Positions 915-39,682 of a DNA stretch of 64,000 bases are shown here, in pieces (position 1 is the stretch's first letter; each line of letters starts with the position of its first letter). The translations under genes and the position numbers were made by a program. This DNA is from Thalia democratica. Taxonomy: Eukaryota. The notes beneath the pieces are model-generated. The model worked only from the letters and a program-made list of their open reading frames with translations, ran no database searches and had not been told where the DNA came from. Location of the stretch: assembly GCA_965202585.1 (NCBI GenBank), contig OZ241829.1:9796001-9860000 (forward strand), given 5' to 3'.

Positions 915-3900
915 ATGAAAATGAGAAACAAGAAGTGAAAAATTCTTCTGATTTAACGTCTACCTTAGAAGACATGGCAGAGTTAGTTAGATACAATGTA
1001 ATAATTGTCATTAATATTTTTTTTCTGTCAATGACACATTTAAGTGTTAACGTTTCAAATATCTAACAGCTTATTGTCACTATGTTTTAATGTAAATACT
1101 GCAATATATACGGCTTGTTATACTTTACAGTTTTTTGTTGTAACATAACAACATTAAAACATTTTGTTAAACAAAAAGTTAATGGTTAATTATTTTGTTT
1201 CACATCAGACTTACAAAAGGTTGATTATTACTATGTTTTTATCTACATACAGCTTATTACAAATTTTAAGTCCATTTGTAACAAAAAATAGTTAAATTAT
1301 TTTCATTATTTTTTTTTATCACTAGTAAAATATTTTTATATAATATATGCAAGCAAAAACCCACTTTAAGTATTTAAAAAAAATTTTTCGTCAGACTCAC
1401 AAAAGGGGTGCCCCAACTCGAAGTGACTGACATCACCGAGGAAGGTTGGACATGCACCCACCAGATTGTCTCCCCGGCAACCCAACACCATGGCAACCTA
1501 GAAGGGGAATTCCCTTGTGCGAGAGAGTTTCCTTTTACACTTGATGATTTCCAAAAAAGGGCTGTAAAGTGTGTGGATAACAACAAGAGCGTTTTGGTTT
1601 GTGCACATACAAGTGCAGGAAAGACCACTGTTGCAGAGTGAGTAATACTTATTAGTTTGTTGTATCAAAGTATTTTGATATTATTTATAACAGTAAAAAC
1701 GTTTTTGTTTGTGCATTGCGCACATACCTCAGCTGGAAAGACCATTGTTGCTAATTTAGTATTTGTTTCTTGTTGATGGTTAAACTTTTCAAAATTACTT
1801 AAAATAGTAATAGTAGTAAATTGGATTTGTTTTTGGACCCCGGAGTACGGCTTACCTGTTTTCTTACTTAAAATAATTGATTGTTTTTAATACACTCTAA
1901 CACTCTATCTGAGAAGATCAGTTTTTTTGAGTGGTATTGGAAGGTAGCTGTTTTTCTCTTAAATTAATATTTTTTTAATAATAACTTTATACAGTACTAC
2001 CCACACAGATAAGCCATTGAAGTAGTACTCGAAAAATACCAGAAATTGTTTTGGTTTTAATATATAAATTTATAGTTTTTAAATATGTTTTAATTAATTT
2101 ATAATCTGCAGATAAACAATAACAACAGAGCTCAAAAAACACCAGTAATAATTTACAAATAATTTTCAATTTTAATAAGTATTTAAAGAAAACAACTTTT
2201 ACGTATAAGTAAATTCATTCAAAACTGTCTTATATATGTGAATTCTAATAGTTTTTATACAAAAAGTATTTACAATGTAATAAAGTATAATAACAATTAT
2301 TACTACTTAACAACAATGAGAAAATTAAATACAAGAAATCCTATTACATAAAGTAAAAGTAAATATTATAAATTTCACAGATATGCAATAGCGACAGCCT
2401 TGAAAAAGCACCAGCGAATTATATACACTTCACCTATAAAAGCCTTATCCAATCAGAAGTACCGAGACTTGAAAGAAGTTTTTGGCGATGTAGGACTGAT
2501 GACCGGTGACGTCACAATTGACGAACACGCGTCATGTGTTGTCATGACAACTGAGGTAATTGTGTGTTTGTTAATCAGAGTTTTTATATGGGGATCATTT
2601 TTTTAAAACTCTGAACGTATAAAATGATTTAAGATTGTAAATAATAACTCAGTGTTAGCGTTTTTTTAGCAGATTTTTGAAGTATGTCTTTTTTTCCAAC
2701 CCTTGTGATAAAAGACTTTTTAATTTTTTGACAGTTTGCTTATTGTTTTTGTGTTGTTGAAGTTTTTAAAATTTTAATCATAAGTGTGTTGTGAAAACAA
2801 GTTGAACTGTGCCGGTATAAAAAGTAAGCAAAGTAGTTATGTTATTTAACACATTTACATTGCATATTATATAACTAAACCATAAAAACTGTAGATTTTA
2901 AATAAAATTACATACTCAGATACGACAGATATGTACAGTATAAATTTATGTTTGTATACAATATTGTTTTCGTGCTACACTCAAAACTCCCAGATACTCA
3001 AAAGTATTATATACTGTGTCTCAGGATGTAGAATGTAAACGTAGTAAAATACAAGTTAATTAAACTAATTAACTATTTCAGTAATAAATTTCCACTAACA
3101 AAACCTATTAAGATAAAAAGCATTAGGAGGGGTTGTTTTTGAGACTAAAATAAATTATTCTATAGAATTAAATAAAACCAAGTATCATGTATGTGTTTAT
3201 CAAACATTAAGAATATATTTAATTCAACTCATTAAAAGTATGTTTATCGTGGAGATGATGTGTCAAAAATATCAGGATTAAAAAGATACAAATTTCACTT
3301 AAGTAAATAAATAAATTTGGTAAATAAATCGGAACACTAAACTACTGATTTGCAGATGCTAAACAGCATGCTATACTGTAGTAAAAAATAGTTAGTAAAA
3401 CTATATAAACTAATAACAATATCAAATTATACTAACAGATCCTTAGAAGTATGCTGTACCGTGGTGATGAAGTATCGAAAGCTTTAGGGTGGGTCGTATT
3501 CGACGAAGTTCACTACATGAGAAACAAGGAACGTGGTGTTGTATGGGAAGAAACAATCATAATGCTGCCTGCAAATACTAGGTTGTTGTGACGTCATACC
3601 TTTATTTTGTATTAAGTTTGTAATGTTATAGTATTTTTTAATTTTGTAGAATATCACCTCAGATAATTCTTTTTGTTTTATAAACAGTAAAGAACAATAA
3701 TTAAAAATACCTACCACATAAAACATTTTTGAAGGGCAACATTTAATATTGTATTTTTGAGCAATAATTGTAATACTTTTTATAAACATACAGTCATATA
3801 ATTTTTAATGGTTTTATATAAAGTATATCATAACTCACTCATACAATGTAGAGTTTACAAAGTTTCTACTTGGCGGATACAGGTTTCCATCAACTTAAGT

Positions 3901-6900
3901 ATCAGACTCTTTAGAACTATAACAATAGCTTAACAATAAATACCAGTTAATTGACCAAACTAGATAAAACAAAATAAAGTAAGTATAGTATTTTATTAAA
4001 TAAATATAATATTTTCCACCTAACAGGTGCGTGTTCTTATCAGCAACGGTACCAAACTCGATCTAACTAAAAAATTTAAAAATTACAATTTACATAAAAT
4101 ACTTTTTTTGACCTAACAATATTCTTGTCATCAAGGGTACCGAACTCAATCGGACTCGTTTAAATGATTTAAATGATTTAAATAAATATTTTTTAAATCT
4201 CAGATGCGTGTTCTTATCAGCAACGGTACCAAACTCGATCGAACTGGCTTCCTGGGTCTCTAACTTGCACGACACAGAAGTTCACGTTGTTTCGACTAAC
4301 AAGCGACCTGTGCCGTTAGAACACTTCATGTTTCCGTATGGTGGTGATGGAATTCATCTTGTTGTTGATAAGAAGGTTATTTGTTTGTTTTATTTATTAT
4401 TTAAAAAATTTATTTTCCCGTATGGTGATGGAATACATCTTGTTGTGGATAAAAAGGTTATTTGTTTGTTTTATTTACTATTAAAAAAATTCATGTTCCC
4501 GTATATTGATAATGGAATACACCTTGTTGTCGATAAAAAAGTTATTTGTTTGTTGTAACTGTTTTATTTGTTTTTGTACATTTCATGTTCACTTATGGTG
4601 GTATAAGTTTAGTTGTTGATAAAAAGGTTAATTTTTGTTTGTTGTGTTGTATATTTTAAACTTTTATGTTTTCTTATGTTGCTGAGATAGCATCATTGTT
4701 GTTTATAAAATGGTTATTTAATTATTGTTAATTTTTTATTGTTGAATTTATTTGAGCATTTCATGTTCCTTATGCCGGTTCACCTTAGTGCTAATAAAAG
4801 TTAAAGTTAGTTTTTTTCTAACTTTTAGGGTAAAGCTATATTATTTAAACTAAGTGGCCCCTATTGGGGCTATGAGTAGCAAAGGGGGGTGGGGGCGTGA
4901 GCTGTAAAGGGACCACATGGGGATCATGAGGTCATAATTTGAAACTTACACTAGATATCTGGAGTTGATGATGAAGAGCAAAAAAAAAAAAAATTCTTGA
5001 GTGTTTTTAATGGTAGTTTTTTGAGTAATCTTGTTGGAGGAGTTCATAGCTTTTTTAATTTCTGTTTAGGGTTTTTAAAAAAAAAAGTTTGGTAAACCCT
5101 GTATAAATGTAAACATGTGGAAATTTTTCTTTTTTATTAATTTTTTTCCGTGCAATCTCAATTAAAGCATTTTCAAATTTTCAATTGAATTATCAAATAA
5201 GTTTAAAAATTTTAAGTACTATGTCATAACTACTGATACTAAGAATTAACAGAGATGATATTTTACCAGGATTTCCCAAACTCATTTTCATAAACACCCC
5301 TTTAAAAAAAATTATCATAGACACCAATTTTCATAAAATCAAAAATAATCGCCCCTACTCATTACAAACATCGCAATATCTAGTGCAGGGTTTCCCAAAC
5401 TTTTTTTGTTCAGCTGGCCCCCTTAAAAGAAATTGAAAAAGCTATGGCCTCCTCCAACAAGATTACTCAAAAAACTAACATTAGAAAAACATAAAACGTT
5501 TTTTTTGCTTTTCATCTGCAATTCCAGAATATCTAGTGTAAGTTTCAAATTATGTTCTCATGGCCCCCTTTAGTCCCTTAACTGCTCATGCCCTCCCCCC
5601 ATTTTCGGCGCCTTTGCTGCTCATGGCCTCCTGAATATCTGTCATGGCCCACTTTGAGAAACCCTGCTCCATACTATTTGTTAATGCTGTAATATTTTAT
5701 TCTGGGTAAGATTTTAGATAAAACAACTAAAGTTTAGTGGTGTTAACAATTAAATAAAGTAATAATAATTAGATAGCTTATTTATTATAATACTTACAGG
5801 GTAATTTCAGAGAAGACAACTTCAATTTTGTGATGGATACAATCAGAGAAAGTGGGGACAACGCAAAAAGTGATTACGAACTTCGCGGCAGAAATGACGG
5901 AGTGCAAGTAAATTGTTTTATCTGTTTATCATTTATAAAGTTTTATAAATTTAATTCAAATTTTTCTTTGTTAAGAGAGAAAAAAATGAATTTATTGAAC
6001 ATTTTAATATTAATAATAATTAGTTATTCACTTAATAATTAATATTAAGTTACTAAACGGTTTAAGTTATTATCCAATAAATATTTATATCACTTTTGGA
6101 CCTAATTAGTAATACTACTAATAGAAAGTTTTTAATAATTTTTTTACAACAATTTAAAATTTTCATGATCCTCTAACTTAAGTTTGAAATAATATATACT
6201 TGAAGGAATAGATAAAATTGTTAAGAATATTAAACCTAGTGAACATAATAGCACGCTTAAACAAATTTGTTTTGAAACGAGGAATTTTTATTTTAAATGC
6301 TGTGCAATTGAAAAACCATTTTGTTTTGTTTATAAACTTGCTTTACAAAATTTAGATATTTTAAAAAATAAACTTGCTGTAGAGTAGTTTTTAAACTTTT
6401 AAATATTTTACAGTCAAACAGCTCATGCCAGCAGATAATAGAACTGATTCAACGAAACGAGTATCTTCCAGCAATTGTGTTTTCATTCAGCAAAAAAGAA
6501 TGTCAGTTCTATGCAAACGCTTTCAATGACATATGTTTCAACGATGGTATGTAGACTTTTTTAAAATTATAAGTGCTAAATAGATATTTATAAATAGATA
6601 AACGTCTTAATTTAAAATATCTTTTATGTAACTTTTAGTTGGTTTGTATTATGTTTATTTAATTAAGAAATATTTTTTTTAATTATTCAAATGCTTATTT
6701 TTTTAGTTATATATTTAAGTAAGTATATATTTTGTACAAGGTGTCTTTGCCTAAAAGATCTACTGTACTTTTTACTTTGTTTTGCTTTATGTACTTCATT
6801 AGAAAATTTTTTTTACTTAATTTAGAATTTTTTTATTTTATAATCTTTATAACTTACTAGATTCGTTTGCATGATTAGTTATTATTTAATATGTTGTACA

Positions 6901-9900
6901 AATTCCTTTTGAATGTAGAAATTTAAGACAGAAAAAAAAGAGAATTAAATACAAACAACGTTACAGCTGCAGAGCAACGCCTGGTGGACGAAATATTCAC
7001 CGCTGCTATTCAACAACTCAGTGATCAAGACAGGGAATTACCCCAGATAGAAAGCTCGTTGAAGCTGTTGAGGAGGGGAGTTGGAGTTCACCACGGGGGG
7101 TTGCTGCCCATCGTGAAGGAGGCTACAGAGATACTGTTCGGTGAGGGACTTGTCAAGGTTTTTGGTTATTCTATGTATTAAATTAATAACTAACTCTGTA
7201 ATTGTTGTTAACTGTAAAGTTTTCTTTATCTTGTTATGTTTATAAAAATATAAAATTATAAGTTTAATTTACTGTTGTTCAATGAAGGGCTTGTTCAGGT
7301 TTTTATTTGTTGTTTAATAAAACTAACTTACAAAAACGTTTTCTATAATTATAACTCATTTGTGAGTTGACTGTTGTTTACCAGAAAAAAAAATTAAAGA
7401 TTAAATAAAAGTGGTTTGATTTTGAAGCATAGTTCAAAAAGATGTTATTCTCGTCTGAAAATTTCATAGTAATAAATATTAAATGGTATAAAAATTCTAA
7501 ATGAATTCATTGTTATCTTAAATGACTATTTTTTTAAAGGACCAATAATTTTTAACAAATAATACGCTTTAAATACAGAGTGGTTTATTTCTCTTAATTT
7601 TAAATGTGTCATTGTTATATTGTGTAATTTTTCCAGGTATTATTCGCAACTGAAACATTCGCAATGGGAATTAACATGCCAGCCAGAACTGTGATATTCA
7701 CTGCAACTAGAAAGTTTGATGGAAACGAATTCAGAACTGTTAGTTGTATCAGCTCTTTCTTTTGTATATACTGAAAAAACACTTTAAAAAATTTTAATTT
7801 CTAACTTATCTAATTATTACTTTACTATTTGATATAGTCTTAAAAAAGTGTAATTATTAATAATGTCAAATATTTTTTTTTTTTTCATAAATAAAATGCC
7901 TAACTTGTTTTTCTCAATACAACTACATAAAAGATTATACGTTTTATTTCGAAAAATGTTTTTATTTATTTACTTCAAAAAAAATCATAAAAATATAATT
8001 TGATTGCGAAATTACACAGATATCAGGTGATGAATAGAAATATGAACAACAATTTTTATTTATTTTCAATATTTAACTTTCTTTTGATTAGCATAAACAG
8101 GTAAGAAGAATTAGTCTAAAAAATATCACACAATAAAAAACAAGATGTATGATACACTTTAATTACACAACTCAACTAAAAATAGATTTTAAAAAGTGTA
8201 AATTTTTATCAGATTGTGGTGTGGAATGATAAACTAAATGGTTTTTGAATGAGTGTAAAATTAGTTCGCTAATCATAAATCAAACCTATAAATAAATCTA
8301 TTTCACAGATATCAGGTGGGGAGTACATTCAGATGTCGGGAAGGGCGGGAAGAAGGGGCAAGGACCCCTCAGGAATTGTGGTTGTCATGGCAGATGATAA
8401 ACTGCAACCCGACGTTGCCAAGCAACTAATGCAGGTGGGAATATTGTTTATTTTCATTACTTTTGAAACACATTTTTTGAATGAAATGTTGCTAGCAACA
8501 CCACTCTAAATTCAAATTTACAGATATTAGAGTAATTTAGATAATAAATTTGTCTGTTTGGTAGATAACTGTACAAGTATCAGGAATGTCAAATGTACAA
8601 ATGTTATGTAAAAATTTGTTACTATATCAAGCTCGTGTTCACACCATAGTTTTAATAAACTATCGAATTTACGTTGTTGCAACTAGCAAAATTATATATA
8701 TAATTATATTGAGTCTATAAACTTTTTACATGTCAATAATTTGTATTTGTACAAATAGGTACAATTTAAGGCCATAGGGGGGGGGGGGTAGACCATGTTT
8801 TTTACAAGTTGATCTTATTTTATAGAGTTTTTACTAAGCTTCAAGATGCTTTTTACCGTTTTTAAAAATTCGAATTAGTTTTTGAGATATGACCGGCCAA
8901 AGTCGGGCCGCATAACAGGTTCCTTATGGGGAAGGAAAACTAAAACGGCGAAAAAAGACTAATGCATTCAAAATCTATCTCCTCCTTCATTTTTTAAGCA
9001 ATCTTCTTCAAACTTTCACAGTCTATTCTTTATACAATAAAAAAAAAACGTTATTTGTGACTTTAAAAAATTTCAAGTAAAAATACCTTTTTTTTGTAAT
9101 TTTATGACAAAAGTTAAAAAAAAAAGTGAATTTTCATCAAAAAAAATTTTTTTTTACAAAAAAAGGTATTTTTACTTGAAATTTTTTAAAGTCACAAATA
9201 ACGTTTTTTTGTTATTGTATAAAGAATAGACTGTAAAAGTTTGAAGAAGATTGCTTAAAAAATGAAGGAGGAGATAGATTTTGAATGCAATAGTCTTTTT
9301 TCGCCGTTTTAGTTTTCCTTCCCCATAAGGAACCTGTTATGCGGCCCGACTTTGGCCGGTCATATCTCAAAAACTAATTCGAATTTTTAAAAACGGTAAA
9401 AAGCATCTTGAAGCTTAGTAAAAACTCTATAAAATAAGATCAACTTGTAAAAAACATGGTCTACCCCCCCCCTATGGCCTTAAACTGTTTTTTATAGGGT
9501 GTGCAGTATTTAAGTGTCGTAAATGCAGATTGTGATTCATCAACATACAAACCATCAATTTGTTTGTTTATTTTATGATAAAAAATACTTTATTAAAATA
9601 CAAAAAATATTTATAGGGCGAAAGTGACAAACTTGAATCTGCGTTCCGGTTGACTTACCACATGCTGCTGAACCAGATGAGAGTAATCGGAGCGGAACCG
9701 GAGAAAATATTGAGCAAAAGCTTTTATCAGTTTCAACAATATGCTGAATTACCCAGAATTATTAAAAGTTTGTTTTGTTTGTATTTATCTGTTATAAGTA
9801 TAAGGTTGCCTTTTTGGACTAAAATATGTGTATTTCAATAAAAGGCAAAATTCAGGGCTGCACCCCTAACATTTTTTACAGAATAAAAGTTTTCAACTTA

Positions 9901-12900
9901 AGACTAAGTAACTGTTTGTGTATAAGTAATGCCTATTGTTATTTAAATTTGATTTTTTTTAAATACTTCCCACTGAAGACCAACATTTTTGTAAATAAAA
10001 TTACAGACATTTAAGAAACGCATAACTTCGCATAAAGATTCCAACCTTTAAATAGAAATATTTATATTGATAATGAATTATTAAAGCTACTCAATTTTAT
10101 TTGAAACTGAAAACTTTAATTTAGACTAAGTCTAATTCAGAATTTCCCAAACTTTTTTTCATAAGGCCCCCTTTGAAGAAATCAACAAAAAGCAGTGTTC
10201 CTCTAATACGGTTTCTCAAAAAACTACTTAATCCTAAGACCGTTTTTTTTTGTACTTCATCACCAACTCAAGTATACTAGTGTAATTTTAAACTATAGCT
10301 TTATGGGTCCCCTAACTTTCTAAAGCGGACCACTTAAGAAAACCTTGATATAGTGTAAGTTTGAAAAATTTCCCATAATATATTATTTAGGTTTAAAAAT
10401 ACCCTATTGAATACACCCAAGATTTTTTTTCTATTCACCATCAACTCGAGACTATCTAGTTTCAAGTTATGACCTAATGACTCTCAGTGGTCTTTTAACT
10501 AATGGTCCCCCTTTGGCCCCTTTGCAGCTTCCTAAATTTCTGAGATGGCCTGGAAGTGGGCCATCTGATCCACAAAAATAGTCTAAATTTAACAAGTTTA
10601 AATAAAAGAATATTTTTTCAGAAAGTGAAGAACTCCGCATGGAAATATCAAGCCTGCAAATAGAAGATTGCCACCAGGAGTATTACGAAATACAAGCGCA
10701 ATTAGATAAACTGACCAATCAGATCAACCAAAAGCTGATGAAATCTCGTCACGTGATCAAGCATTTGCAACCAGGCAAGATGGTGAAAATTGTGAATGGT
10801 GAAAATAAGTTCGGGTGGGGCGTGGTTGTTTCGAAGAGGGTAAAATCCCCTAAGTTCGCACTCGGTTGGTAAATTTTAATGAGTTTTATTTGGTATTGTT
10901 TATTGTACGATTATTAGGTTTTTTAGTAAAATTTATTCACCACATAATTGTTTATGAAATAAACATCTACATACTCTTTTTCAATGTGTGAATATCAGGT
11001 CTTTTAATTATGCCTAATATGCCTGATAATGAGGCCATAATTTGAAACTTACATTAGATATTCTGGAGTTGATGATGAAAAGCAAAAAAAAAACAGGTCT
11101 TAAGTGTTTTTAATGGAAGTTTTTTGGGTAGTCTTGTTGGAGGAGCGCCATAGCTTTTTTAATTTGAAAAAAGTTTGGGAAACCCTGGTCTAAACTTTAA
11201 AAAGGTTTACTAATGTTTGTAATGGAAGGTAATGTATATTAGCTGTTAGGGGCCAGGAGTTGAAGACTTTTCATTGTTGATAATGGAATATTTTAAAGGA
11301 TGAAGTAGATAGTTAATATCTAGTAAACGTATGTTGTAATCTTTGCGTTGGAAGTTTGAATCAAGGACCATGGCTAAATTTTTAGAATACAGTGAGGAAT
11401 CAGAATCAGTGATTATTGTAGAAATACCAGAGAAAAAATTATTTTCTGTTTAAACCAAGCAGTCATATTCATAATGCAACTAGAACAAGCAGACCTAAAA
11501 AATTTAAAGTAAAAAGCTTGAAAAGTACATTTCCACGCAATCACTTTTGCACAAGTGACAGTTTTGCACGGTTGACTTGTTTAAGTCACCGCTAAAATTG
11601 TCAATTGCCGCTCACCAAGCCGGTAGGAGGAACCGCTTACCGACCAATGGTTAGGGGTAACAGTTATATTAAAAGAAATAAACCTGTGCAAAACTGACGC
11701 CGTGCAAAAGTGACCATTTGTGCAAAAGTATCTTCGTCAAAAGTGAAATTTCGTGGAAAAATGTCCCTATTTACATTTTTGTACCCATCTTATACAGGTT
11801 ACAACAAAGACAATGCGATTTTTTAAGCTCTTTTTTCACCACGTGCAAACGAAAAATAAAATAGTTAATATAAATTAAAAAAACATGTTGTTTCGATATG
11901 ATATATCTTAACTGATTTATATCACTACAAGAAAAACTATTCTATAGGTTACAATGAAGACAATGCGGAATTTTATAAAAAATATTTTTTACATACGTAA
12001 ATAAATTATTCCATATAGTTAGTAATATATGATCCATATTGGTTGATAAATATTTTTTCCATTCTTATAAATAAATCTTCCTTAGGTTACACCGAAGACA
12101 ATGCTGACCAGAGGAACCAAACAGTCCTCGAAGTTTTGATAAACTGCGACAAATCAACAGTGAGGCCCCACGCCCCCTTCGGTACCACCCCAAAACCCCC
12201 TTGTAACCATGACAACACCGAACCTTCTGTGGTGTCCTGCTTGCTGAACGTTGTGAATGGGGTGAGCAAGCGGAAGTTGAACATAAATGGGGGGACGGGC
12301 TACTTCAATTTGCTTGACAACAGGAAGGAGGTCATGCGGGACGTGCAGGTTGGTTGCTAGGGAGAAATATTTATAAGTTATGTGTTTGTTTGTTTTTAAA
12401 GTTTGTTGAATTGTCATCCAATAAATAGAATAATCAAAAAAAAAAGTGAAAAAATTGGTTGCTAGGAATAACTATATGATTAAATGAATTAATCATTAAT
12501 AAGATTGAAATTTGAAAGCTGTTTTTGTTTATTATTTTATAGTGTGAATCGAACTTTTATTTCTTTTAAATTCTTAAACAGCAAATTCTTATATTTGTGT
12601 TTTGTCATCATGTTTTTTTATATTTAAGTAATTTTTGATTATTCACAATGGGTATTTCTTATAAAGGGTATTTAGTCACTATAGCTCAACCCAAACTCTA
12701 AAGCTAATAAAAGTTTTCTTAGTATTATTAACAACGTAAAGATTACTAAGAAATCATCGAAAATGTAAACTACATATACATTTTAAGATAGAAGATTGTT
12801 GTTCTCTTGTTAGTTTGAATTCGAATTTAGACGGTGCTTAAGCATGATAACGGAACAATTGCTGAAATCTGCCCGATAGAAGACGTGCAAATTAAAGATC

Positions 12901-15900
12901 ACGACTTCTTGAACATGAAACAGAAAATAGACATTTTGCACCAGCGAATACTGAATCATCCCCTGCATTTGAGTGAGGATTTAGAAGAAAAACTTAAAAT
13001 TGTTGAAAGCAAGACCAAAGTTAGTTAATAGGTGTATATGTATTAATAGTTTTTATATTTCTATTTCAAGTAATTTAAAATTTGTAAAGGATAACAAATT
13101 AGTGGTTAATGTGTGAATAATTTCATGATGTGTATGTTATGTTATTTTATGACAACCTTTTCTTATTTTTTGATTGTTTTATTAAATCACTCTATTTAAA
13201 AAAAAATATTTTTTGTATTGCATTATGAGCTAAATTAATGTTTTTTTCTTAATTTCTTAGATAATCATTTTTAGGCTGCTTTTTTGTAAAAATTATGAAA
13301 AACATATTATGAGTTACATTGTAGAAGTTTTTTGTATGCATATATAGGTTTTAAGAGCTATTGTACTTTGTAGTAAGAACTGCAGGTTACATATGTAAGG
13401 GTTGTGATTTGAGATTAAGAGAAAAGAATTAAAAATAATGAATGTTGGATTAACATCCAAATTTTAGCAGCTCCTAGCTTTTCTATCATACCTTCTAAGT
13501 TTAAAACAAGAGTTGGTGTTCTTAGATTTTTTACAAAAAACACAAAAATGGTTAAGCCTTTGTTGTAAGTTAATTGTAAGCTACAGTTGAACATTGTATC
13601 AAGCAAAAAATAGAAACTAAGTTCTGTAAATGTTTAACTTTTAATAAGGTTGTTATAAATGTAATTTATTATGCCTTTTTCCAAACAAGTAGTAAATATT
13701 TTATTTTAACAAAAAATTATAGCTGTTATCTGAAACATCAAAATCAACAGTTTACAAAAAAATGAGTTCTATTTATACCGTTATTAAAACAAATGTTTCT
13801 AAAAGAGCTAGGAAAATAATAGTTCGAATAAAATATTTGTAGCTGCTATCTGATACAAAGAAATCAACGAAAGAGTTGAAAGACAAGAAGAAGATTTTAA
13901 AGATGGAGGAATTACTAAGTAGGAAGAGAGTTCTTAGGATGATGGGATTCTCAACAGAATCCGATGTCTTGACTGAGAAAGGTAAAATTTCATAATTAAT
14001 GATTTTTGTTACATAGTACTTCTTTTTTTTTTTTTTCATTTAGTTATTTAAAAATTGTTCTTAGCCTTGTAAGTTATACAAATATTGAATTCTCAATTAA
14101 ATCCGATGTACTTTTACAAAAAAAAGTTAATACTTTCAAAATTAAAAAACTATAACTTAAAATACTTTTATAAAATTTGTATGAAAATTAACAACTTTTC
14201 TTTGTTTTTGTAATTACCAAAAATTGCAGCTAAAAGAAGGTGAAATTTTAATTTTTGATTTTAATATAAGTAAATATTAATCTAAAAGATATTTAAAAGG
14301 TAAATAAGGGTATCTTATTTCTAAAGGCAAGTTTTTAATACTATTTTGTTGCTTACACAAATAAAACTAAATAATATAAGTTAATAAGTACTGAAGTTAT
14401 GTCGTATGTGCATAAATAATCTAATGTGAAATAATAGTAGAAATTTAATAAAGATATGTGAATTTGTTCTACTAAATAATAAATAAATTTTTTTTAGATA
14501 ATTATTAATATATAATTTAAAATGAGATAAAAAAAAATCTAGTTTATTTACAGCTGATACAATTTTATTATTTTTTTTTTGTTATTCAATTAAACTATAT
14601 CAACTTATAATTTTACAAAAACTTTAGTAGCTTGTAGGATACGAACAGCTGATAAGTTACGACTAACTAAATAATTATAATTTATAATATTTTTTAAATA
14701 TTCAGGTTAAGTAGCTTGTAGGATACGTTAAGCTAATAATTAAATATTAAAGGAATTGTTATATAACATAATTAATTATAAAAAAATATTCAGGATTAGT
14801 AGCTTGTGAAATATGTGCAGTAGATATATCAAGATTTACTGAAACATATTGATTTTATTAATACAAATACTTGATACAAATACTTATTATAAATTTATTT
14901 CTGCTAAACAAATATTAAATGAAATTAATTGTATTTCAAATATTCAGGTTTAGTAGCTTGCGAAATATGTGCAGTAGATATATTAATATTCACTGAACAT
15001 TATTGATTTTATTAATATAAATACTTGTTACTAACTAACTCATTACTAAAATGACAAATAAATTATTGTAAATTTTTTATAGGTTTAGTTGCTTGCGAAA
15101 TATGTGCAGCTGATGAACTACTATTAACTGAAATGTTATTCAACGGAGTTTTCACAAGTATATTACCAGAAAAATGTTGTGCACTTTTAAGTTGCTTCGT
15201 ATTTGACGAAAAAGTTTGTTTTTATATTAAATATGTTTATTGAAAATTCGATGTGTATGTTCGTAAAGTTAAAAAAATACTTCAGTATACTGAAAGAGAA
15301 GTGGTATAAAAAAAAAAGCTTTAAAATTTCATTTTGTTATTAAATATAAATAAATAAGCTTGTCTGATAAGTGATAGGTAATGTTATGATATTTCAGAAG
15401 GTTTACAGTTTTTTACTTAAACTTGTATAATTGCTTGAGGAATATAGTTCATTTAAAATAAATCTTCAAATAAGTTAATTAGTTTACAAACATATTTTTT
15501 TTGTCAAGTTTTATACTAAACTTTTACTATATAATGTTGATTTAAATGTTAGATTGTTAATAACTTCTCATTGAAGCATTTAGTTGTAAGATGAAGCATT
15601 TTTTGTGGGCTTTTTAACTAATAACATATAATTACATGTATTTACATATTTTCCAGTGCAAAACACAGTCGAAACTAACTGAAAGTTTGGCCAAACCCAT
15701 AGAACTAATGAAGAAAACAGCGTCTAAAATTGCTAAAGTTTGTTTATTTTTATAAATAAAATATTATAAAGAATAATTAAAGTTTTTTAAATGTTTTATT
15801 ACTCATAGTTACAACCGAAAATTGTATAGTGTAATTGATTAATATTTATGCACAAGTTAACATGAAAGACTTTTTTGAAATTGTAGAATTATCCAAATAC

Positions 15901-16647
15901 TTAATATTTTTTTTCTATTCAATGAATTTGATTTTTATAAGTTTTTATAAAAATATAGAATAAACTGCTCTTGATGTAATTTGTTTATATTTAGCTCTAA
16001 AAGTGCATTAAAAATAAACAAACAAATAAACTGTCTTTCTGATACAGATATCAATAAAATGCAAATTAGAAACAAATTATCATTTAATACTGACCATTAA
16101 TCTCTTCGTTATTTGTTAGACTATTAAACACTTAAGCAATATGCAATAATTTAATTTAACCGGAAGTTTTTTCGTAAACTTAAATGTTTAACTAAACACA
16201 TTTTTCTCAGATATCAATAGACTGCAAGTTGGAAATAGACGAAGGCAAATATGTGTCATCCTTCAAAACCAATATTATGGATGCTGTGTACGCCTGGGCC
16301 ATGAACAAGAGTTTTGATCAAGTTCTTGAGTTGTGCGAAATTTATGAAGGTTTATTTAGTTTTAATTGTGTTTTTAAGATTTTTTAAATAAAAAATGAAT
16401 TTTGTGGTATTTTGTTAAGGCATAATTGATTAAATAATTAAGTTAATAATTATAATATTTTTTTATATTTTTTTTCTACTAACATTCAGGCAGTTTTATC
16501 CGTTGCATGCGGCGTTTGGAGGAACTTCTCCGGCAGTTGGCGCTGGCGAGCACGAAAATGGGAAATACCCAGCTCAAGAACAAATTTGAAACGTGCTCGA
16601 AACTCATCAAGCGTGACATCGTGTTTGCCGCCAGTCTCTACTTGTAG
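915..16647 (+). CDS. MTREX: Ski2-like DExH RNA helicase MTR4 (SKIV2L2/MTREX), nuclear exosome cofactor; 19 exons, 5' end probably outside the window
   Basis: Manually spliced GT-AG exons 915-981, 1395-1637, 2381-2555, 3439-3581, 4204-4375, 5800-5907, 6414-6546, 6967-7157, 7637-7738, 8309-8434, 9617-9767, 10622-10864, 12086-12348, 12831-13019, 13843-13981, 15083-15213, 15657-15737, 16211-16349, 16490-16647 join in one frame (about 983 codons). Motifs: AHTSAGKT (I), [13 protein letters not shown] (Ia), DEVHYM (II), FLSAT (III), [27 protein letters not shown] (V), [10 protein letters not shown] (VI), [18 protein letters not shown], and the MTR4-type C-terminus [12 protein letters not shown]. Confidence 0.96.
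1205..1220 (+). repeat. Echo of the exon 2 acceptor/exon start
   Basis: tcagacttacaaaagg vs tcagactcacaaaagg at 1391-1406 (15/16). Confidence 0.65.
1687..1760 (+). repeat. Echo of the exon 2 3' end (Walker A) in the following intron
   Basis: 1720-1752 gca cat acc tca gct gga aag acc att gtt gct ([11 protein letters not shown]) vs exon 1603-1635 ([11 protein letters not shown]). Confidence 0.9.
2004..2150 (+). repeat. Two echoes of the exon 3 acceptor/start
   Basis: The copy from 2109 matches the real junction from 2378 at 28/37 ungapped positions; a more decayed copy is at 2004-2045. Confidence 0.8.
2991..3382 (+). repeat. Three echoes of the exon 4 acceptor/start
   Basis: 2991 cagatactcaaaagtattatatactgtg; 3235 aaagtatgtttatcgtggagatgatgtgtcaaaa; 3353 cagatgctaaacagcatgctatactgtagt; real junction cagatccttagaagtatgctgtaccgtggtgatgaagtatcgaaa. 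Confidence 0.8.
4021..4160 (+). repeat. Two echoes of the exon 5 acceptor/start
   Basis: After aacag at 4022-4026, tgcgtgttcttatcagcaacggtaccaaactcgatc is identical to 4205-4240. A second, decayed copy at about 4120-4160 reads [14 protein letters not shown] vs [14 protein letters not shown]. Confidence 0.92.
4376..4803 (+). repeat. Tandem ladder of exon 5 end + donor copies (about 81-86 nt period)
   Basis: Repeats of [17 protein letters not shown]|gttatttg with GT donors at 4376 (real), 4457, 4541 and 4627, then decayed copies near 4665-4715 and 4755-4803. Confidence 0.93.
4853..5101 (-). mobile_element. hAT-like MITE family copy A (reverse orientation)
   Basis: Ends in gtttggtaaaccctg; the body is the reverse complement of the 5386-5666 copy (tctagtgtaagtttcaaattatg, ctccaacaagattactcaaaaaact). 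Confidence 0.75.
5386..5666 (+). mobile_element. hAT-like MITE family copy B (full length, about 280 bp)
   Basis: 14-bp TIRs CAGGGTTTCCCAAA / TTTGAGAAACCCTG (13/14). CAGGG termini are typical of non-autonomous hAT elements. No intact 8-bp TSD. Confidence 0.78.
5702..5727 (+). repeat. Echo of the exon 6 acceptor/start with the AG destroyed
   Basis: ctgggtaagattttagataaaacaac vs cagggtaatttcagagaagacaac (5797-5820). Confidence 0.55.
7272..7480 (+). repeat. Echo of the exon 8 donor (7272-7305) and of the exon 9 start (7439-7480)
   Basis: ctg ttg ttc aat gaa ggg ctt gtt cag|gttttt vs ata ctg ttc ggt gag gga ctt gtc aag|gttttt; and MLFSSENF vs VLFATETF. Confidence 0.75.
8013..8040 (+). repeat. 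Echo of the exon 10 acceptor/start
   Basis: cacagatatcaggtgatgaatag vs cacagatatcaggtggggagtac (8304 onward); the copy has an in-frame TAG. Confidence 0.75.
8770..9479. mobile_element. Young palindromic MITE, about 330-bp near-perfect TIRs, TTAA target-site duplication (Kolobok-like)
   Basis: ttaa|GGCCATAGGGG...CCCCTATGGCC|ttaa. Arms about 8770-9100 and 9154-9479 differ by only a few bases and homopolymer lengths. TTAA TSD with purine-purine termini fits Kolobok better than piggyBac. Confidence 0.88.
10138..10570 (+). mobile_element. hAT-like MITE copies C (10138-10347) and D (partial, about 10395-10570)
   Basis: cagaatttcccaaac...cacttaagaaaaccttg; shares tctcaaaaaactac, catcaccaactc and ctagtgtaa with copy B. 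Confidence 0.68.
11031..11187 (-). mobile_element. hAT-like MITE copy E (reverse, partial)
   Basis: Ends in gtttgggaaaccctg; closely resembles copy A (ataatttgaaacttaca..tagatat..ctggagttgatgatgaa). Confidence 0.75.
11525..11767. mobile_element. MITE-like element with imperfect TIRs and inverted subterminal repeats
   Basis: Left acatttccacg..cacttttgcac..cagttttgcac; right gtgcaaaactg..gtgcaaaagtg..cgtggaaaaatgtccc. Confidence 0.65.
11791..11975 (+). repeat. Two echoes of the exon 13 acceptor/start
   Basis: ag|gttacaacaaagacaatgcg (AG ending 11797) and ag|gttacaatgaagacaatgcg (11947) vs real ag|gttacaccgaagacaatgct (12085). Confidence 0.88.
13717..14130 (+). repeat. Echoes on both sides of exon 15 (acceptor echo 13717-13760; donor echo 14084-14130)
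   Basis: tag|ctgttatctgaaacatcaaaatcaac vs tag|ctgctatctgatacaaagaaatcaac; ttctcaattaaatccgatgta vs ttctcaacagaatccgatgtc. Confidence 0.85.
14622..15000 (+). repeat. Ladder of four echoes of the exon 16 acceptor/start
   Basis: Over the first 32 exon nt, identities are 29/32 (14948), 27/32 (14794), 22/32 (14706) and 23/32 (14622). Confidence 0.92.
16041..16080 (+). repeat. Echo of the exon 18 acceptor/start
   Basis: cag|ata tca ata aaa tgc aaa tta gaa aca (ISIKCKLET) vs cag|ata tca ata gac tgc aag ttg gaa ata (ISIDCKLEI). Confidence 0.85.
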
Positions 16648-16688
16648 AATGTATTCATAAAGAAAATATTTTTCCCTACTAGCCTTTA

Positions 16689-16870
16689 AGTCTCTACTTG
16701 TAAAATGTATTAACTTAGGAGAAAATATTATTTATTAGAAATTTTTTAATATACCTTATTAGAATTTTCATACTAAACATGACATATTAACTCGATATGT
16801 CATCCTAGTAATAAAAACAGTTTCAATTTAATATTAATATCGCCACTAGTCTCTACATGTAGATGTTATT
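16689..16870 (+). repeat. Two echoes of the MTR4 stop-codon region in the 3' flank
   Basis: agtctctacttgtaaaatgtatt (16689) and cgccactagtctctacatgtagatgttatt (16841) vs gccgccagtctctacttgtagaatgtatt (16627 onward). Confidence 0.85.
16810..16815 (+). terminator. Candidate polyadenylation signal of MTR4
   Basis: First AATAAA after the stop codon (about 160 nt downstream); weak evidence in AT-rich DNA. Confidence 0.35.
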
Positions 16871-32431: not shown

Positions 32432-33085
32432 TTAGACCGAAATGGTGTTTGCACCTAGTTCAACACTACTTGACTGGGCCACATCACCGCTACCACTGAC
32501 GTCTGCCCCATCACCTTCAGATCTTTCACAAGTTAGCTCACTGATACAATACAGTCCATTTTTGCCATAAATTGCTTCAACCATGCTAGTCCTGTACTTG
32601 GCGCGCGGTGGCTTGAGTGGTGCCACCTCTAGCTTCTCTTTAGGCATGCGCCTCGGAGAGCCCCGGCTCGGTCCTGCCTGACTCAGCACATCAAGAGCAA
32701 TTTGAGCTGACTTTCTGGGGGCTTCGTTGAGATCTTCAAGCTTAACACACTCAGCTTTCAAGAACTTCCTTTTCTTCAAACGTAGCTCTGTGGATATTGA
32801 CTCGGGTCGGCTCTTGCTCAACTCAGCTAGCTGGCGCCGTTGACTGACCACGTCCTCGTTAGATTGCAATTGACTTGCTTGCAAATCTTTGACATTTTTC
32901 TTTGAGCGTAGCAATACAATCTGGAAGGTGCAGACATCATCAGCAACTTCTTCGCCAACCACTTCCTTCCTGCCGCAGATTGAAAACAGTTTTCTGATTC
33001 CGTCCCAACACGCAACAGCCCTGGCCCTGAGCCGCTGGCCTGACGTTACAGCAATTTCAGCACCTCTGTAAATTGGGGTTGACAT
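32432..33085 (-). CDS. Intronless orphan ORF, 217 aa
   Basis: 654-nt ATG-started ORF coinciding with a sharply bounded GC-rich island, improbable by chance in this AT-rich background; actaatgtaacag acceptor 22 nt upstream. No recognisable domain. Confidence 0.65.
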   Translation of the reverse strand: MSTPIYRGAEIAVTSGQRLRARAVACWDGIRKLFSICGRKEVVGEEVADDVCTFQIVLLRSKKNVKDLQASQLQSNEDVVSQRRQLAELSKSRPESISTELRLKKRKFLKAECVKLEDLNEAPRKSAQIALDVLSQAGPSRGSPRRMPKEKLEVAPLKPPRAKYRTSMVEAIYGKNGLYCISELTCERSEGDGADVSGSGDVAQSSSVELGANTISV

Positions 33086-39000: not shown

Positions 39001-39127
39001 AATGATCACTTTTTTAAGTAGTTTTTAGCAAAACATAATTTTATTATTCCAAAAAACTATAAAAAACAATGTTTCACAAGCTTTAACCAACTAATTTCCC
39101 AAACAGATTTTTACTAATCAATTGAAC

Positions 39128-39682
39128 ATGGACATGACACGTGACCTCAATAAGCTAAAGATGGTGAGATACCATAAGAATAATGGGGATATTTTTGTAA
39201 TCGAAAGCTACATAGAGTTTCTTAACCGCCCCCTTCCGGAGCCAACCAATGGCGACATTCTTCCCCAGAATGCCGTCATGATGGCCCGGATGCGGGGGGC
39301 CGGGTTCTTCAGGAGGATGGCGACCAGGTTGGGGAACTTCATGCGCGCGTTGGGGTCGCTCTTCGGAGGTGCTTTCTTCTGCTGCTGGAAGTCCAAAGGA
39401 AGCAACGGCAAAGGAGGAGTTGATGTTGAAGCGACTGTGGACGCCTTTGAGGAGTTTCAGTTCACTATTGGTGAAAAGGAATACGAAAGCGATTCAAACA
39501 TTGAGTCTTCGGTTTGCTTCAAGGCACTCCAGAGCATGTTCCCTTGCTGCTTTAATGAAGTTAATGCAGTTGGTGAGGATGATCGTAAAATTACAATCCA
39601 TGAGTTTTTAAGGGAAGACCAGGGTAGTAATGCTGTACTTGACAGAGAAGCAATTTCGATTGGCAATATAACCCAGTTTTGA
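39128..39682 (+). CDS. Intronless orphan ORF, 184 aa, with an amphipathic basic helix and CC motifs
   Basis: First ATG at 39128; the ORF fills a GC-rich island; actaatttcccaaacag acceptor 21 nt upstream; FFRRMATRLGNFMRALGSLFGGAFFCCW and FPCCF segments. Confidence 0.62.
   Translation: MDMTRDLNKLKMVRYHKNNGDIFVIESYIEFLNRPLPEPTNGDILPQNAVMMARMRGAGFFRRMATRLGNFMRALGSLFGGAFFCCWKSKGSNGKGGVDVEATVDAFEEFQFTIGEKEYESDSNIESSVCFKALQSMFPCCFNEVNAVGEDDRKITIHEFLREDQGSNAVLDREAISIGNITQF

What the first reader, a model, noticed from the sequence alone, without database searches (positions are those of the whole stretch)
1205..16870. Systematic exon-edge echo ladders around an entire gene
At least 25 decayed copies of exon-intron junctions sit in the introns beside their source. 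They cover acceptors of exons 2, 3, 4, 5, 6, 9, 10, 13, 15, 16 and 18, donors of exons 2, 5, 8, 13 and 15, and the stop codon. Polarity is consistent: copies of exon starts lie upstream and copies of exon ends lie downstream, as expected if short tandem duplications straddle the edge and only the copy contiguous with the exon body stays functional. Tandem duplication as a route to new introns and splice sites is an established idea, but I know of no description of it acting at most junctions of a conserved housekeeping gene and building ladders. Inference: this genome's introns grow by recurrent edge duplication, leaving cryptic splice sites and a fossil record of each exon. A directed mechanism (RT- or repair-templated) is possible but not shown.
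Basis: partly seen in the sequence, partly recalled or inferred. Interest (0 to 1): 0.88.

Follow-up and report, generated by a model that had tools for sequence, protein, structure and literature searches.

The report
Exon-edge copies littering a gene's introns
Nearly half of the splice junctions of a housekeeping RNA-helicase gene in this very AT-rich marine animal genome have decaying copies of themselves in the adjacent intron, left by small tandem duplications that are found at exon edges far more often than elsewhere in the introns.

Summary
The gene is an MTR4-type helicase: 18 GT-AG exons at 1395-16647 with a clean reading frame. I found 24 same-strand copies of exon edges in the adjacent intron or 3'UTR. 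They cover 15 of its 35 splice junctions and the stop codon, with near-perfect polarity and none on the opposite strand.

Independent contigs of the source organism reproduce the ladders exactly. A second organism label (6-13% intron divergence) also has them. One rung, the stop-codon echo, is absent from a second allele. RNA contigs use only the true junctions.

About half of the arrays are demonstrably contiguous tandem duplications with units of 56-150 nt. Some rungs are copies of other rungs, as in a minisatellite. The echoes decay neutrally: stop codons, frameshifts and GC loss. The excess of third-position differences fits synonymous drift of the exon, not "recoding".

Two things remain unexplained. 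Junction-spanning duplications outnumber intron-only ones by roughly 15-fold per base of target, and simulations rule out detectability as the cause. Half of the echoes are short patches with no detectable homology in the flanks.

A single-locus precedent exists (human F7 intron 7 VNTR). I found no gene-wide description. Unchecked first-reader notes report similar echoes in other genes of this genome.

The parts
1395..16647 (+). MTR4/SKIV2L2-type helicase gene, exons 2-19 of my model. Exons: 1395-1637, 2381-2555, 3439-3581, 4204-4375, 5800-5907, 6414-6546, 6967-7157, 7637-7738, 8309-8434, 9617-9767, 10622-10864, 12086-12348, 12831-13019, 13843-13981, 15083-15213, 15657-15737, 16211-16349, 16490-16647.
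   Evidence: clean ORF, all introns GT-AG. Pfam DEAD, MTR4 stalk, MTR4 beta-barrel and DSHCT. RNA contigs join exons 13-16 and 17-19 at these junctions.
1687..1774 (+). Echo of the exon 2 donor (source 1577-1657). Period 117, 74% identity, GT lost. It contains the Walker-A peptide copy with a Ser AGT->TCA switch.
   Evidence: Exact in an X2 contig 1453-1843. Organism B has it without the 7-nt insert at 1713.
2091..2157 (+). Echo of the exon 3 acceptor (source 2360-2427). Distance 269, AG kept, patchy.
3203..3268 (+). Echo of the exon 4 acceptor (source 3415-3480). Distance 211, AG lost.
   Evidence: Two haplotypes in X1 over 3187-3519.
4001..4161 (+). Exon 5 acceptor ladder with a period of about 90. 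The outer rung 4001-4068 is 88% identical overall and 40/42 in the exon part. The middle rung 4088-4161 is 78% identical.
   Evidence: An X1 contig 3561-4057 is exact. An organism B contig covers 3543-4107.
4409..4816 (+). Exon 5 donor ladder. It is a contiguous tandem array of 81-92-nt units (51 nt of exon end plus about 33 nt of intron start). Rungs: 4409-4486, 4490-4569, 4573-4660, 4663-4740, and a fifth decayed rung to about 4816. GT is kept in 4 rungs.
   Evidence: TRF period 81.. An X1/X2 contig 4342-4950 is exact. An organism B contig 4373-4787 has 26 substitutions.
5704..5760 (+). Echo of the exon 6 acceptor (source 5799-5853). Period 95.
7276..7326 (+). Echo of the exon 8 donor (source 7135-7186). 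Distance 141, GT kept.
8011..8036 (+). Echo of the exon 10 acceptor (source 8300-8325). Distance 289, 85% identity, patchy.
9992..10057 (+). Weak echo of the exon 12 acceptor. It is separated from its source by a later repeat-element insertion at about 10125-10580.
   Evidence: Repeat similarity at 10243-10468 to 11029-11092.
11770..11969 (+). Two echoes of the exon 13 acceptor (11770-11816 and 11932-11969). Periods 138 and about 150, AG kept in both.
   Evidence: An X1 contig 11708-12222 is exact.
12455..12475 (+). Copy of the first bases of intron 13 (donor region), 105 nt downstream. Short: 18 of 21 bases match.
13711..13748 (+). Echo of the exon 15 acceptor. Distance 120, AG kept.
   Evidence: An organism B contig covers 13605-13905.
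14084..14145 (+). Echo of the exon 15 donor. Distance 145, GT lost.
   Evidence: An X1 contig 13938-15219 is exact.
14605..14997 (+). Exon 16 acceptor ladder with four rungs: 14605-14678, 14684-14767, 14770-14844 and 14917-14997. Identity to the exon rises from 66% to 82% toward it. Rungs 1+2 and rungs 3+4 are sister pairs.
   Evidence: An X1 contig 13938-15219 is exact.
16045..16072 (+). Echo of the exon 18 acceptor. Distance 163, 86% identity, patchy.
   Evidence: An X1 contig 15704-16218 is exact.
16689..16877 (+). Two echoes of the end of the coding sequence plus the stop codon, lying in the 3'UTR (16689-16732, period 56; 16842-16877). The first rung is absent from a second allele.
   Evidence: Joint 16657->16717, skipping 59 nt in register, in X1 and X3.
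59241..59470 (-). In a second gene (fibrinogen-domain gene on the minus strand, about 59597-57214): a 101-nt tandem duplication, 2.2 copies, 90% identity. It contains a whole 59-nt intron with its flanking exon parts and gives a candidate extra 42-nt in-frame exon.
   Evidence: Pfam Fibrinogen_C.
6604..6862 (+). Comparison case: the one clear intron-only tandem duplication inside the MTR4 gene (period 139, about 66% identity).

Best explanation
The echoes are decaying by-products of small tandem duplications. Founder units are typically about 55-150 nt. Each overlaps a boundary between selectively constrained sequence (exon body) and free sequence (intron or 3'UTR).

After such a duplication there are two copies of the splice site or stop codon. 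Only alleles in which the copy contiguous with the exon body is the one used give a normal mRNA. Surviving copies of exon starts therefore lie upstream and copies of exon ends lie downstream.

Once two units exist, the array behaves like a minisatellite. Rungs are themselves duplicated, units are lost again, and occasional short conversion-like events from the exon appear to refresh a rung. The spare copies are not under coding constraint and drift toward the AT-rich intron composition, while the exon keeps changing at synonymous sites.

Shown here:
- the junction-spanning anatomy, polarity and contiguous arrays;
- rung-of-rung genealogy;
- an allele lacking one rung;
- neutral decay;
- use of the true junctions in RNA.

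Inferred:
- The molecular route of duplication (break repair with fill-in, or replication slippage).
- The cause of the strong excess at exon edges. I tentatively attribute it to biased formation at the edges of the GC-richer exons in a 75-80% AT genome. It could equally be biased retention.
For: - Polarity and strand: 18 of 19 peaks lie on the predicted side, none on the minus strand, and none for mid-exon queries.
- Every echo spans the junction.
- Contiguous tandem structure is seen at the exon 5 donor (TRF period 81, 2.8 copies; alignments of 345-359 nt at offsets 84 and 165). It is also seen at the exon 2 donor (105 of 117 nt), exon 5 acceptor middle rung (74 of 88), exon 6 acceptor, stop codon (56) and exon 16 rungs 1/2 (spacer homology z=12), and in the second gene at 59241-59470.
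- Rung genealogy: exon 16 rungs 1+2 share CAGTAGAT, and rungs 3+4 share GCTTGTAGGATACG.
- An allele lacking exactly one stop-codon unit is present in X1 and X3.
- Neutral decay: mismatch is 0.177 at codon position 1, 0.146 at position 2, 0.305 at position 3 and 0.24 in the intron flank. There are 91 non-synonymous against 57 synonymous codon changes and 13 stops in 296 codons. Exon-to-echo changes are 110 G/C-to-A/T against 40 the other way. Echo GC is 0.32 against 0.40 in the source. AG is kept in 11/15 echoes and GT in 5/7, close to what 78% identity predicts.
- In the youngest exon 5 donor rung, 3 of 6 third-position differences are changes on the exon lineage.
- Between organism labels, exon differences are almost all third-position (12 of 13 listed in exon 13) and denser than intron differences.
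- RNA contigs splice exons 13-14-15-16 and 17-18-19 at the true sites, with zero RNA depth over the ladders.
- The echoes have ordinary read depth and no distant copies, so they are not mobile elements.
Against: - For about half of the echoes (exons 3, 10, 13, 15 and 18 acceptors, and the second stop echo), the spacer between echo and source shows no homology to the DNA beyond the echo. A plain tandem duplication of that period and apparent age predicts such homology.
- At the exon 5 acceptor, the outer rung is much more like the exon than the middle rung. This needs an extra process such as conversion.
- A position-blind duplication process predicts several intron-only duplications for every junction-spanning one. 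The opposite is seen, and simulations do not blame detectability.
- The Ser AGT/TCA switch within a fully synonymous 7-nt cluster in the exon 2 donor echo is unlikely under simple decay.
- Only one window, with two multi-exon genes, could be examined.
Confidence: 0.72

Rival explanations
1. No junction bias exists. Tandem duplications arise evenly along the DNA. Junction-spanning ones are simply the only ones that stay recognisable, because one copy is frozen by selection and is compositionally complex.
For: - The frozen source halves the divergence: positions 1 and 2 differ at 0.16 against about 0.30 at position 3.
- AT-rich queries have higher null scores.
- Small intron-only duplications do occur: 6604-6862, a 19-nt polymorphic duplication at 1950, and many short-period TRF hits.
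- The stop-codon echoes show that the boundary of constraint matters, not splicing.
Against: - Simulations used substitution and indel rates taken from the echoes themselves. They give similar detection power for intron-only and junction duplicates: 0.57 against 0.60 for whole units, and 0.31 against 0.40 for patches of the observed lengths.
- About 16 junction or stop-codon arrays are observed against about 2 intron-only arrays, although intron-only target is about 3-8 times larger.
- Among young arrays in the whole window (>=80% identity), 5 of 6 include an exon edge.
- In the exon 5 donor ladder, the AT-rich intron part is conserved at least as well as the exon part.
Confidence: 0.15
2. A mechanism aimed at exon-intron boundaries makes the copies. 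Candidates are breaks or stalled forks at the edges of GC-richer, nucleosome-bound exons, or recombination intermediates that stop where homology between very divergent haplotypes ends. In the recombination case, a new copy may come from the other haplotype and so be 'born' with only synonymous differences.
For: - The junction excess survives the detectability controls.
- Haplotypes and organism labels differ by 6-13% with many indels in introns, but almost only at third positions in exons.
- The youngest rungs differ from the exon only at third positions: 0/32 at positions 1 and 2 against 6/16 at position 3 in exon 5 donor rung 1.
- First-reader notes on other windows report synonymous-only echoes. 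These are unchecked leads.
Against: - There is no direct evidence for any break or stall site.
- Eight edges of GC-rich repeat islands in the same introns have no echoes (P about 0.02), which argues against a purely compositional trigger.
- Pooled echoes show ordinary decay at positions 1 and 2.
- Half of the third-position differences in the best case map to the exon lineage after duplication.
- I could not test whether echo bases match the alternative allele.
Confidence: 0.3
3. The echoes are kept because they work: as alternative splice sites giving in-frame or decay-targeted isoforms, as decoy or auxiliary sites for U1/U2AF, or as coding sequence.
For: - AG or GT is retained in most echoes.
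- The reading frame stays open through the first two exon 5 donor rungs, and the 84-nt unit is a multiple of three.
- There is a third-position bias in young rungs, and the peptide is preserved in the exon 2 donor echo.
Against: - There are 13 stops in 296 echo codons, frameshifting gaps, and 91 non-synonymous against 57 synonymous changes.
- Splice dinucleotide retention matches neutral expectation.
- There is no RNA depth over the ladders, and only true junctions appear in RNA contigs.
- The exon 2 donor echo differs between organism labels about as much as its flanks: 5/88 plus a 7-nt indel, against 4/49.
- One rung is dispensable, as shown by the deletion allele.
Confidence: 0.07
4. The echoes are an assembly artefact, for example two haplotypes stitched in tandem.
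For: The genome is extremely heterozygous, a setting in which false tandem duplications occur.
Against: - De Bruijn contigs of public runs match the ladders base for base across whole arrays: 4342-4950, 13938-15219, 11708-12222 and 1453-1843.
- A different organism label and study carries the same ladder with 6% substitutions.
- The copies are 10-34% diverged, short, and multiply repeated.
Confidence: 0.01

Closest known systems
Human F7 (coagulation factor VII) intron 7 37-bp VNTR, whose first unit spans the exon 7 donor (Borensztajn et al. 2006, PMC1557585, read)
   Same: It is a minisatellite founded on an exon-intron boundary, so the authentic donor is followed by a ladder of silent pseudo-donors and the exon-contiguous (most upstream) site is the one used. 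This matches the exon 5 donor ladder here.
   Different: F7 is a single locus, a donor only, with near-identical units. Here 15 of 35 junctions of one gene plus the stop codon are involved. Acceptors are affected more often than donors, the copies are old and decayed, and many are patchy rather than a clean array.
Internal gene duplications that cross exon-intron boundaries: Gao & Lynch 2009 PNAS (cited from memory); the 'inter-boundary' and 'intronic' match classes of Exonize (PMC12343006)
   Same: These are partial exon plus intron segments duplicated within a gene, leaving extra latent splice sites. They are recognised as a source of new introns and exons.
   Different: They are reported as affecting a minority of genes, usually one event per gene. 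I found no report of near-saturation of one gene's junctions, of ladders, or of a strong excess over intron-only duplications.
Intron gain by tandem duplication of an exon segment containing AGGT: Rogers model; Hellsten et al. 2011 (PMC3265369); potato RdRp (PMC4974935); Drosophila cases (PMC2891723)
   Same: A tandem duplication supplies duplicate splice signals, and the mRNA stays unchanged because splicing removes the extra copy.
   Different: In those cases a new intron is created inside an exon and consists of the duplicated exon sequence. Here the copies sit inside pre-existing introns at conserved junctions and no new intron position is created in MTR4. Only the second gene (59241-59470) shows duplication of an intron and a candidate new exon.
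Tandem exon duplication and mutually exclusive exons (PMC9013439)
   Same: Both involve local tandem duplication inside genes, with degenerate copies detectable in introns.
   Different: Those involve whole exons with both splice sites and a preserved frame. The echoes carry only 15-62 nt of one exon edge and one splice site, and they accumulate stops.
Introner elements (PMC9860276)
   Same: They are another process that adds intron sequence and is common in marine organisms.
   Different: Introners are dispersed multi-copy transposons with short target-site duplications. The echoes are single-locus copies of the neighbouring exon edge with normal read depth.

Membership tests
Tandem duplication / minisatellite founded on an exon boundary (F7 IVS7 type) | Head-to-tail units on the same strand, contiguous with the source, with the first unit spanning the boundary | tested here: met
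   Met for the exon 5 donor (units 81-92 nt), stop codon (56 nt), exon 2 donor (117), exon 5 acceptor middle rung (88), exon 6 acceptor (95), exon 16 rungs 1/2 (about 150) and the second gene (101).
Tandem duplication / minisatellite founded on an exon boundary (F7 IVS7 type) | The whole period is duplicated: the spacer is homologous to the DNA beyond the copy | tested here: not met
   Not met for about half of the echoes (exons 3, 10, 13, 15 and 18 acceptors, second stop echo, exon 16 rungs 2/3). Spacer scores lie within the null under three scoring schemes. One case (exon 12) is explained by a later repeat insertion.
Tandem duplication / minisatellite founded on an exon boundary (F7 IVS7 type) | Copy-number variation between alleles | tested here: met
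   A joint 16657->16717 removes exactly one stop-codon unit in register, in X1 (about half the depth) and X3. Other ladder joints had flanks that were too short (20 nt) to count.
Tandem duplication / minisatellite founded on an exon boundary (F7 IVS7 type) | Pseudo-sites stay silent and the exon-contiguous site is used | tested here: met
   RNA contigs join exons 13-16 and 17-19 at the true junctions, and RNA depth over the ladders is 0. This rests only on metatranscriptome contigs, so rare use is not excluded.
Intron gain by tandem duplication (Rogers/Hellsten model) | A new intron at a novel position, made of duplicated exon sequence and bounded by the duplicated AG|GT | tested here: not met
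   The echoes lie 56-600 nt inside existing introns, each next to its own junction, and the MTR4 coding sequence is uninterrupted by extra introns. Whether any MTR4 intron position is novel could not be tested because no orthologues were available.
Tandem exon duplication / mutually exclusive exons | A whole exon copied with both splice sites, similar length and preserved frame | tested here: not met
   Only 15-62 nt of one edge is copied, with a single splice site. There are 13 stops and frameshifting gaps.
Transposon-derived intron sequence (Introners, MITEs) | Many dispersed copies, high read depth, terminal repeats or target-site duplications | tested here: not met
   There are no distant matches beyond chance. 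Depth over the ladders is like single-copy flanks (about 100-350), against 10^4-10^5 for true repeats at 4800-5800.
Recursive splice sites | An acceptor AG immediately followed by a donor-like GT, regenerating a 5' splice site | tested here: not met
   Present only where the true exon itself starts with GT (exons 13 and 16) and in one exon 5 rung (AG|GTGCGT). Absent from the exon 3, 10, 15 and 18 echoes.
MTR4/SKIV2L2 helicase (identity of the host gene) | DEAD/DEAH helicase core, MTR4 stalk and beta-barrel (arch), C-terminal DSHCT domain | tested here: met
   Pfam on single-exon translations: DEAD 1.8e-4, MTR4_beta-barrel 1.4e-6 and 1.5e-5, stalk 2.7e-3, DSHCT 2.2e-15. Helicase motifs are visible in the translation.

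The most novel reading that the evidence does not exclude
Exon edges in this hyperdiverse, very AT-rich genome are true hotspots for 50-150-nt duplications. One possible cause is that repair or recombination intermediates between haplotypes stop where homology ends, at the exon-intron boundary. The process would then be genome-wide. It would be a major source of intron growth, cryptic splice sites and new micro-exons. It could also create copies taken from the other haplotype, which would explain echoes that differ from their exon only at synonymous sites.
Probability: 0.25. Interest if true: 0.85.

Novelty: new variant of a known kind. Interest (0 to 1): 0.6.

Why it matters
If the junction excess holds genome-wide, this organism would be a natural system for studying several questions.
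- How introns lengthen.
- How duplicate splice sites are tolerated or silenced.
- How new exons arise. The second gene in the window shows a candidate 42-nt exon made this way.

The echoes also act as dated snapshots of past exon sequence. This allows synonymous change on the exon lineage to be separated from neutral decay.

There are practical consequences too. The copies are traps for gene predictors and spliced aligners. The 'synonymous recoding' noted elsewhere in this genome should not be read as evidence of coding function without the controls used here.

Tried and rejected
- Coding constraint on echoes. Rejected for this window on stops, frameshifts and non-synonymous changes. The third-position excess (ratio 1.9) is no larger than expected from a neutral copy plus synonymous drift of the exon.
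- Detectability as the cause of the junction excess. Two simulation designs, whole-unit and patch, with a doubled indel rate as an extra run, gave similar power for intron-only copies.
- A deeper layer of undetected echoes filling the introns. After removing significant hits, same-strand scores on the 'right' side are not above the opposite-strand control (P=0.14).
- Faster churn of AT-rich DNA as the cause of patchiness. Not supported, because in the exon 5 donor ladder the intron-derived part is at least as well conserved as the exon-derived part.
- Recursive splicing. Not general.
- Related loci from metagenomes. One protein-based and one DNA-pattern scan found nothing.
- Identifying the organism through an exact-protein look-up of a single-exon ORF. 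Not on record. The species remains unknown to me.
- Other local direct repeats outside the gene (18272/18766, 23956/24189, 29967/30412, 35556/35861, 36271/36372). They are AT-rich, weak, and not linked to recognisable exons.
- Five literature searches found no gene-wide description.

Full report
WHAT IS THERE

The window is about 25% GC. On the + strand at 1395-16647 lies an 18-exon gene. I number its exons 2-19. All introns are GT-AG, and the joined exons give one open frame ending at the stop codon 16645-16647. Single-exon translations hit Pfam DEAD, MTR4 stalk, MTR4 beta-barrel and DSHCT, so this is an MTR4/SKIV2L2-type exosome helicase. RNA contigs from a marine metatranscriptome join exons 13-14-15-16 and 17-18-19 at the junctions of my model. 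Other contigs cover exons 3, 4, 6 and 8.

I took 65-nt queries centred on each acceptor and donor, plus eight mid-exon controls. I scored them by local alignment against all 120-nt windows of the 64 kb on both strands. Each query's threshold was the 99.9% quantile of its own distant, both-strand null.
- Acceptor queries gave 12 peaks upstream, 1 marginal peak downstream and 0 on the opposite strand.
- Donor queries gave 0 upstream, 6 downstream and 0 on the opposite strand.
- Mid-exon queries gave none.
- Chance would give about 2-3 hits per strand over all queries.

Iterated alignment listed 24 echoes with score >=18. They are 26-88 nt long and 66-90% identical. Every one spans the junction itself, with 15-62 nt of exon and 1-30 nt of intron.

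The exon 9 acceptor is not supported and the exon 2 acceptor is borderline. I add a weak echo of the exon 12 acceptor. A BLAST of exons against the whole window shows no comparable distant copies.

IS IT IN NATIVE DNA?

Logan contigs of runs X1 and X2 (organism A) match the window without a single difference across whole arrays: 4342-4950, 13938-15219, 11708-12222, 15704-16218, 1453-1843 and 3561-4057. This may be the sample the assembly came from.

Run X3 comes from a different organism label and study. It carries the exon 5 donor ladder (4373-4787: 26 substitutions, 4 gaps), the exon 5 acceptor echo and the exon 2 donor echo. Its introns differ from the window by about 6-13%. The echoes are therefore older than that split and are not assembly artefacts.

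The sample is extremely heterozygous. In exon 13, 12 of the 13 listed differences fall on third codon positions.

ANATOMY

Contiguous tandem arrays are demonstrable at these sites:
- Exon 5 donor: five rungs of 81-92 nt; TRF period 81.
- Stop codon: 56 nt.
- Exon 2 donor: 117 nt.
- Exon 5 acceptor, middle rung: 88 nt.
- Exon 6 acceptor: 95 nt.
- Exon 16 acceptor, rungs 1/2: about 150 nt; spacer homology z=12.
- The second gene of the window, a fibrinogen-domain gene on the minus strand. A 101-nt unit there contains a whole 59-nt intron plus its exon flanks and yields a candidate 42-nt in-frame exon.

Identity to the exon falls with distance in four of five ladders. The ladders are not built only at the live junction. 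Exon 16 rungs 1+2 and rungs 3+4 are sister pairs that share derived bases.

A joint 16657->16717 removes exactly one stop-codon unit in register. It occurs at about half depth in X1 and also in X3. A second allele therefore lacks that rung.

Two features do not fit a plain tandem model.
- For roughly half of the echoes, the spacer is not detectably homologous to the DNA beyond the echo.
- At the exon 5 acceptor, the outer rung (40/42 in the exon part) is far closer to the exon than the middle rung.

One long distance, at exon 12, is explained by a later repeat insertion.

HOW THE COPIES EVOLVE

Pooled over the 24 echoes, mismatch to the exon by site class is as follows.

| Site class | Mismatch |
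|---|---|
| Codon position 1 | 0.177 |
| Codon position 2 | 0.146 |
| Codon position 3 | 0.305 |
| Intron flank | 0.24 |

- There are 91 non-synonymous against 57 synonymous codon changes, 13 stop codons in 296 codons, and many frameshifting gaps.
- Changes run mostly from G/C to A/T, 110 against 40. Echo GC is 0.32 against 0.40 in the source.
- AG survives in 11/15 echoes and GT in 5/7. This is about what 78% identity predicts.
- The roughly two-fold third-position excess is what a neutral copy compared with a selectively frozen exon should show. The exon contributes only synonymous change.
- In the youngest exon 5 donor rung, 3 of the 6 third-position differences map to the exon lineage.
- Between organism labels, third positions differ more than introns do.

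I therefore read the 'synonymous recoding' flagged in other notes as an expected by-product, at least in this window. One oddity remains. The exon 2 donor echo keeps AHTSAGKT through a 7-nt cluster of changes that includes Ser AGT->TCA.

IS THE EXCESS AT EXON EDGES REAL?

I tiled the whole window with 65-nt queries. Same-strand local hits beyond the null maximum were as follows.

| Tile class | Same-strand hits | Opposite-strand hits |
|---|---|---|
| Exon or junction tiles | 11 of 69 | 0 |
| Clean intron tiles | 2 of 80 | 0 |
| Tiles outside the gene | 28 of 745 | 14 of 745 |

- Of the 28 hits outside the gene, 17 lie in three arrays.
- Fisher tests for exon/junction tiles give P=0.007 against clean intron tiles and P=0.0002 against tiles outside the gene.
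- Counted as founder events, about 16 junction or stop-codon arrays stand against about 2 intron-only arrays (6604-6862 and one weak pair). The intron-only target is 3-8 times larger for units of 60-110 nt. That is roughly a 15-20-fold excess per base, with a binomial probability of order 1e-7 under my target estimate.
- Simulated duplications were mutated with rates measured from the echoes, with both copies decaying for intron-only events. They were detected about as often as junction events: 0.57 against 0.60 for whole units, 0.48 with 2.5 times more indels, and 0.31 against 0.40 for patches of the observed lengths.
- Eight edges of GC-rich repeat islands inside the same introns carry no echoes.
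- The stop-codon echoes show that what matters is the boundary of constrained (or GC-richer) sequence, not splicing as such.
- After removing the significant hits, there is no residual same-strand signal in the rest of the introns.
- Alignable echoes make up 12% of intron length. The spans from the outermost echo to the junction make up 32%.

MECHANISM

Best supported (about 0.7): small tandem duplications overlapping a constraint boundary, filtered by selection so that the exon-contiguous signal is the one used. This is followed by minisatellite-type gain and loss, occasional conversion-like refreshment, and neutral decay.

The route of duplication and the reason for the junction excess are inferred, not shown. 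I lean toward biased formation at exon edges (about 0.3) over pure ascertainment (about 0.15). Function of the echoes (about 0.07) and assembly artefact (about 0.01) are unlikely on the evidence above.

COMPARISON WITH WHAT IS KNOWN
- The closest precedent is the human F7 intron 7 37-bp VNTR. Its first unit spans the exon 7 donor, and its pseudo-donors stay silent because the most upstream site is selected (PMC1557585).
- Boundary-crossing internal duplications are a recognised class: the Exonize 'inter-boundary' matches (PMC12343006) and Gao & Lynch 2009 (cited from memory).
- Intron gain by tandem duplication is established (PMC3265369, PMC4974935, PMC2891723).
- None of five full-text searches returned a description of near-saturation of one gene's junctions, of ladders at many junctions, or of a junction excess over intron-only duplications.
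- I therefore class this as a new variant of a known kind.
- First-reader notes on other windows of the same genome (TOR, SEC24, plakin and others) describe the same pattern. They are unchecked and I could not test them.

LIMITS
- I had one window, with two multi-exon genes.
- The read evidence is contigs, not raw reads.
- The RNA evidence comes from a metatranscriptome only.
- The simulation depends on my rate estimates.
- The organism is unidentified.

Noticed in passing
window 59241-59470 (minus strand; gene about 59597-57214): The fibrinogen-domain gene has a 101-nt tandem duplication (2.2 copies, 90% identity). It contains a whole 59-nt intron with both exon flanks. The middle copy forms a candidate extra 42-nt in-frame exon with its own AG and GT.
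   Followed up: partly
window 1720-1752: The exon 2 donor echo encodes the same Walker-A peptide (AHTSAGKT) as the exon. It does so through five synonymous differences clustered in 7 nt, including Ser AGT->TCA. Organism B lacks the 7-nt insert at 1713 that breaks the frame in the window.
   Followed up: partly
window 12086-12348 and other exons: Heterozygosity is extreme. Within one sample, about half-depth alternative bases occur every 3-30 nt, almost only at third codon positions. Intron haplotypes differ by about 10% with many indels, for example 3187-3519 (30 substitutions and 6 gaps).
   Followed up: partly
window 8761-9488: A near-perfect inverted repeat (240-nt arms, 98% identical) sits inside intron 10 and looks like a young foldback or MITE-type insertion.
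   Followed up: no
window 4850-5700, 10125-10580, 11030-11160, 11700-11876: GC-richer repeat fragments in the introns have read depths of 10^4-10^5 in both organism labels. They belong to very high-copy element families. 11520-11760 also carries a short 'GTGCAAAAGTGA'-like internal repeat.
   Followed up: no
window 55965-56304 and 40309-41434: Two tandem repeats lie outside recognisable exons: 108 nt x 3 (92% identity) and 544 nt x 2 (66% identity).
   Followed up: no
window 32432-33085 (-) and 39122-39682 (+): Two GC-rich (46-48%) open reading frames of 217 and 186 aa have no Pfam match. The first is not on record as an exact protein in the public gene-position collection.
   Followed up: partly
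window 4112-4555: The reading frame of exon 5 stays open through the start of intron 5 and the first two donor rungs. Use of a rung donor would add 27-28 residues in frame. No RNA depth was seen there.
   Followed up: partly
window 1950: Organism B has a 19-nt insertion that repeats the preceding 19 nt. It is an example of a small intron-only tandem duplication that differs between the two organism labels.
   Followed up: no
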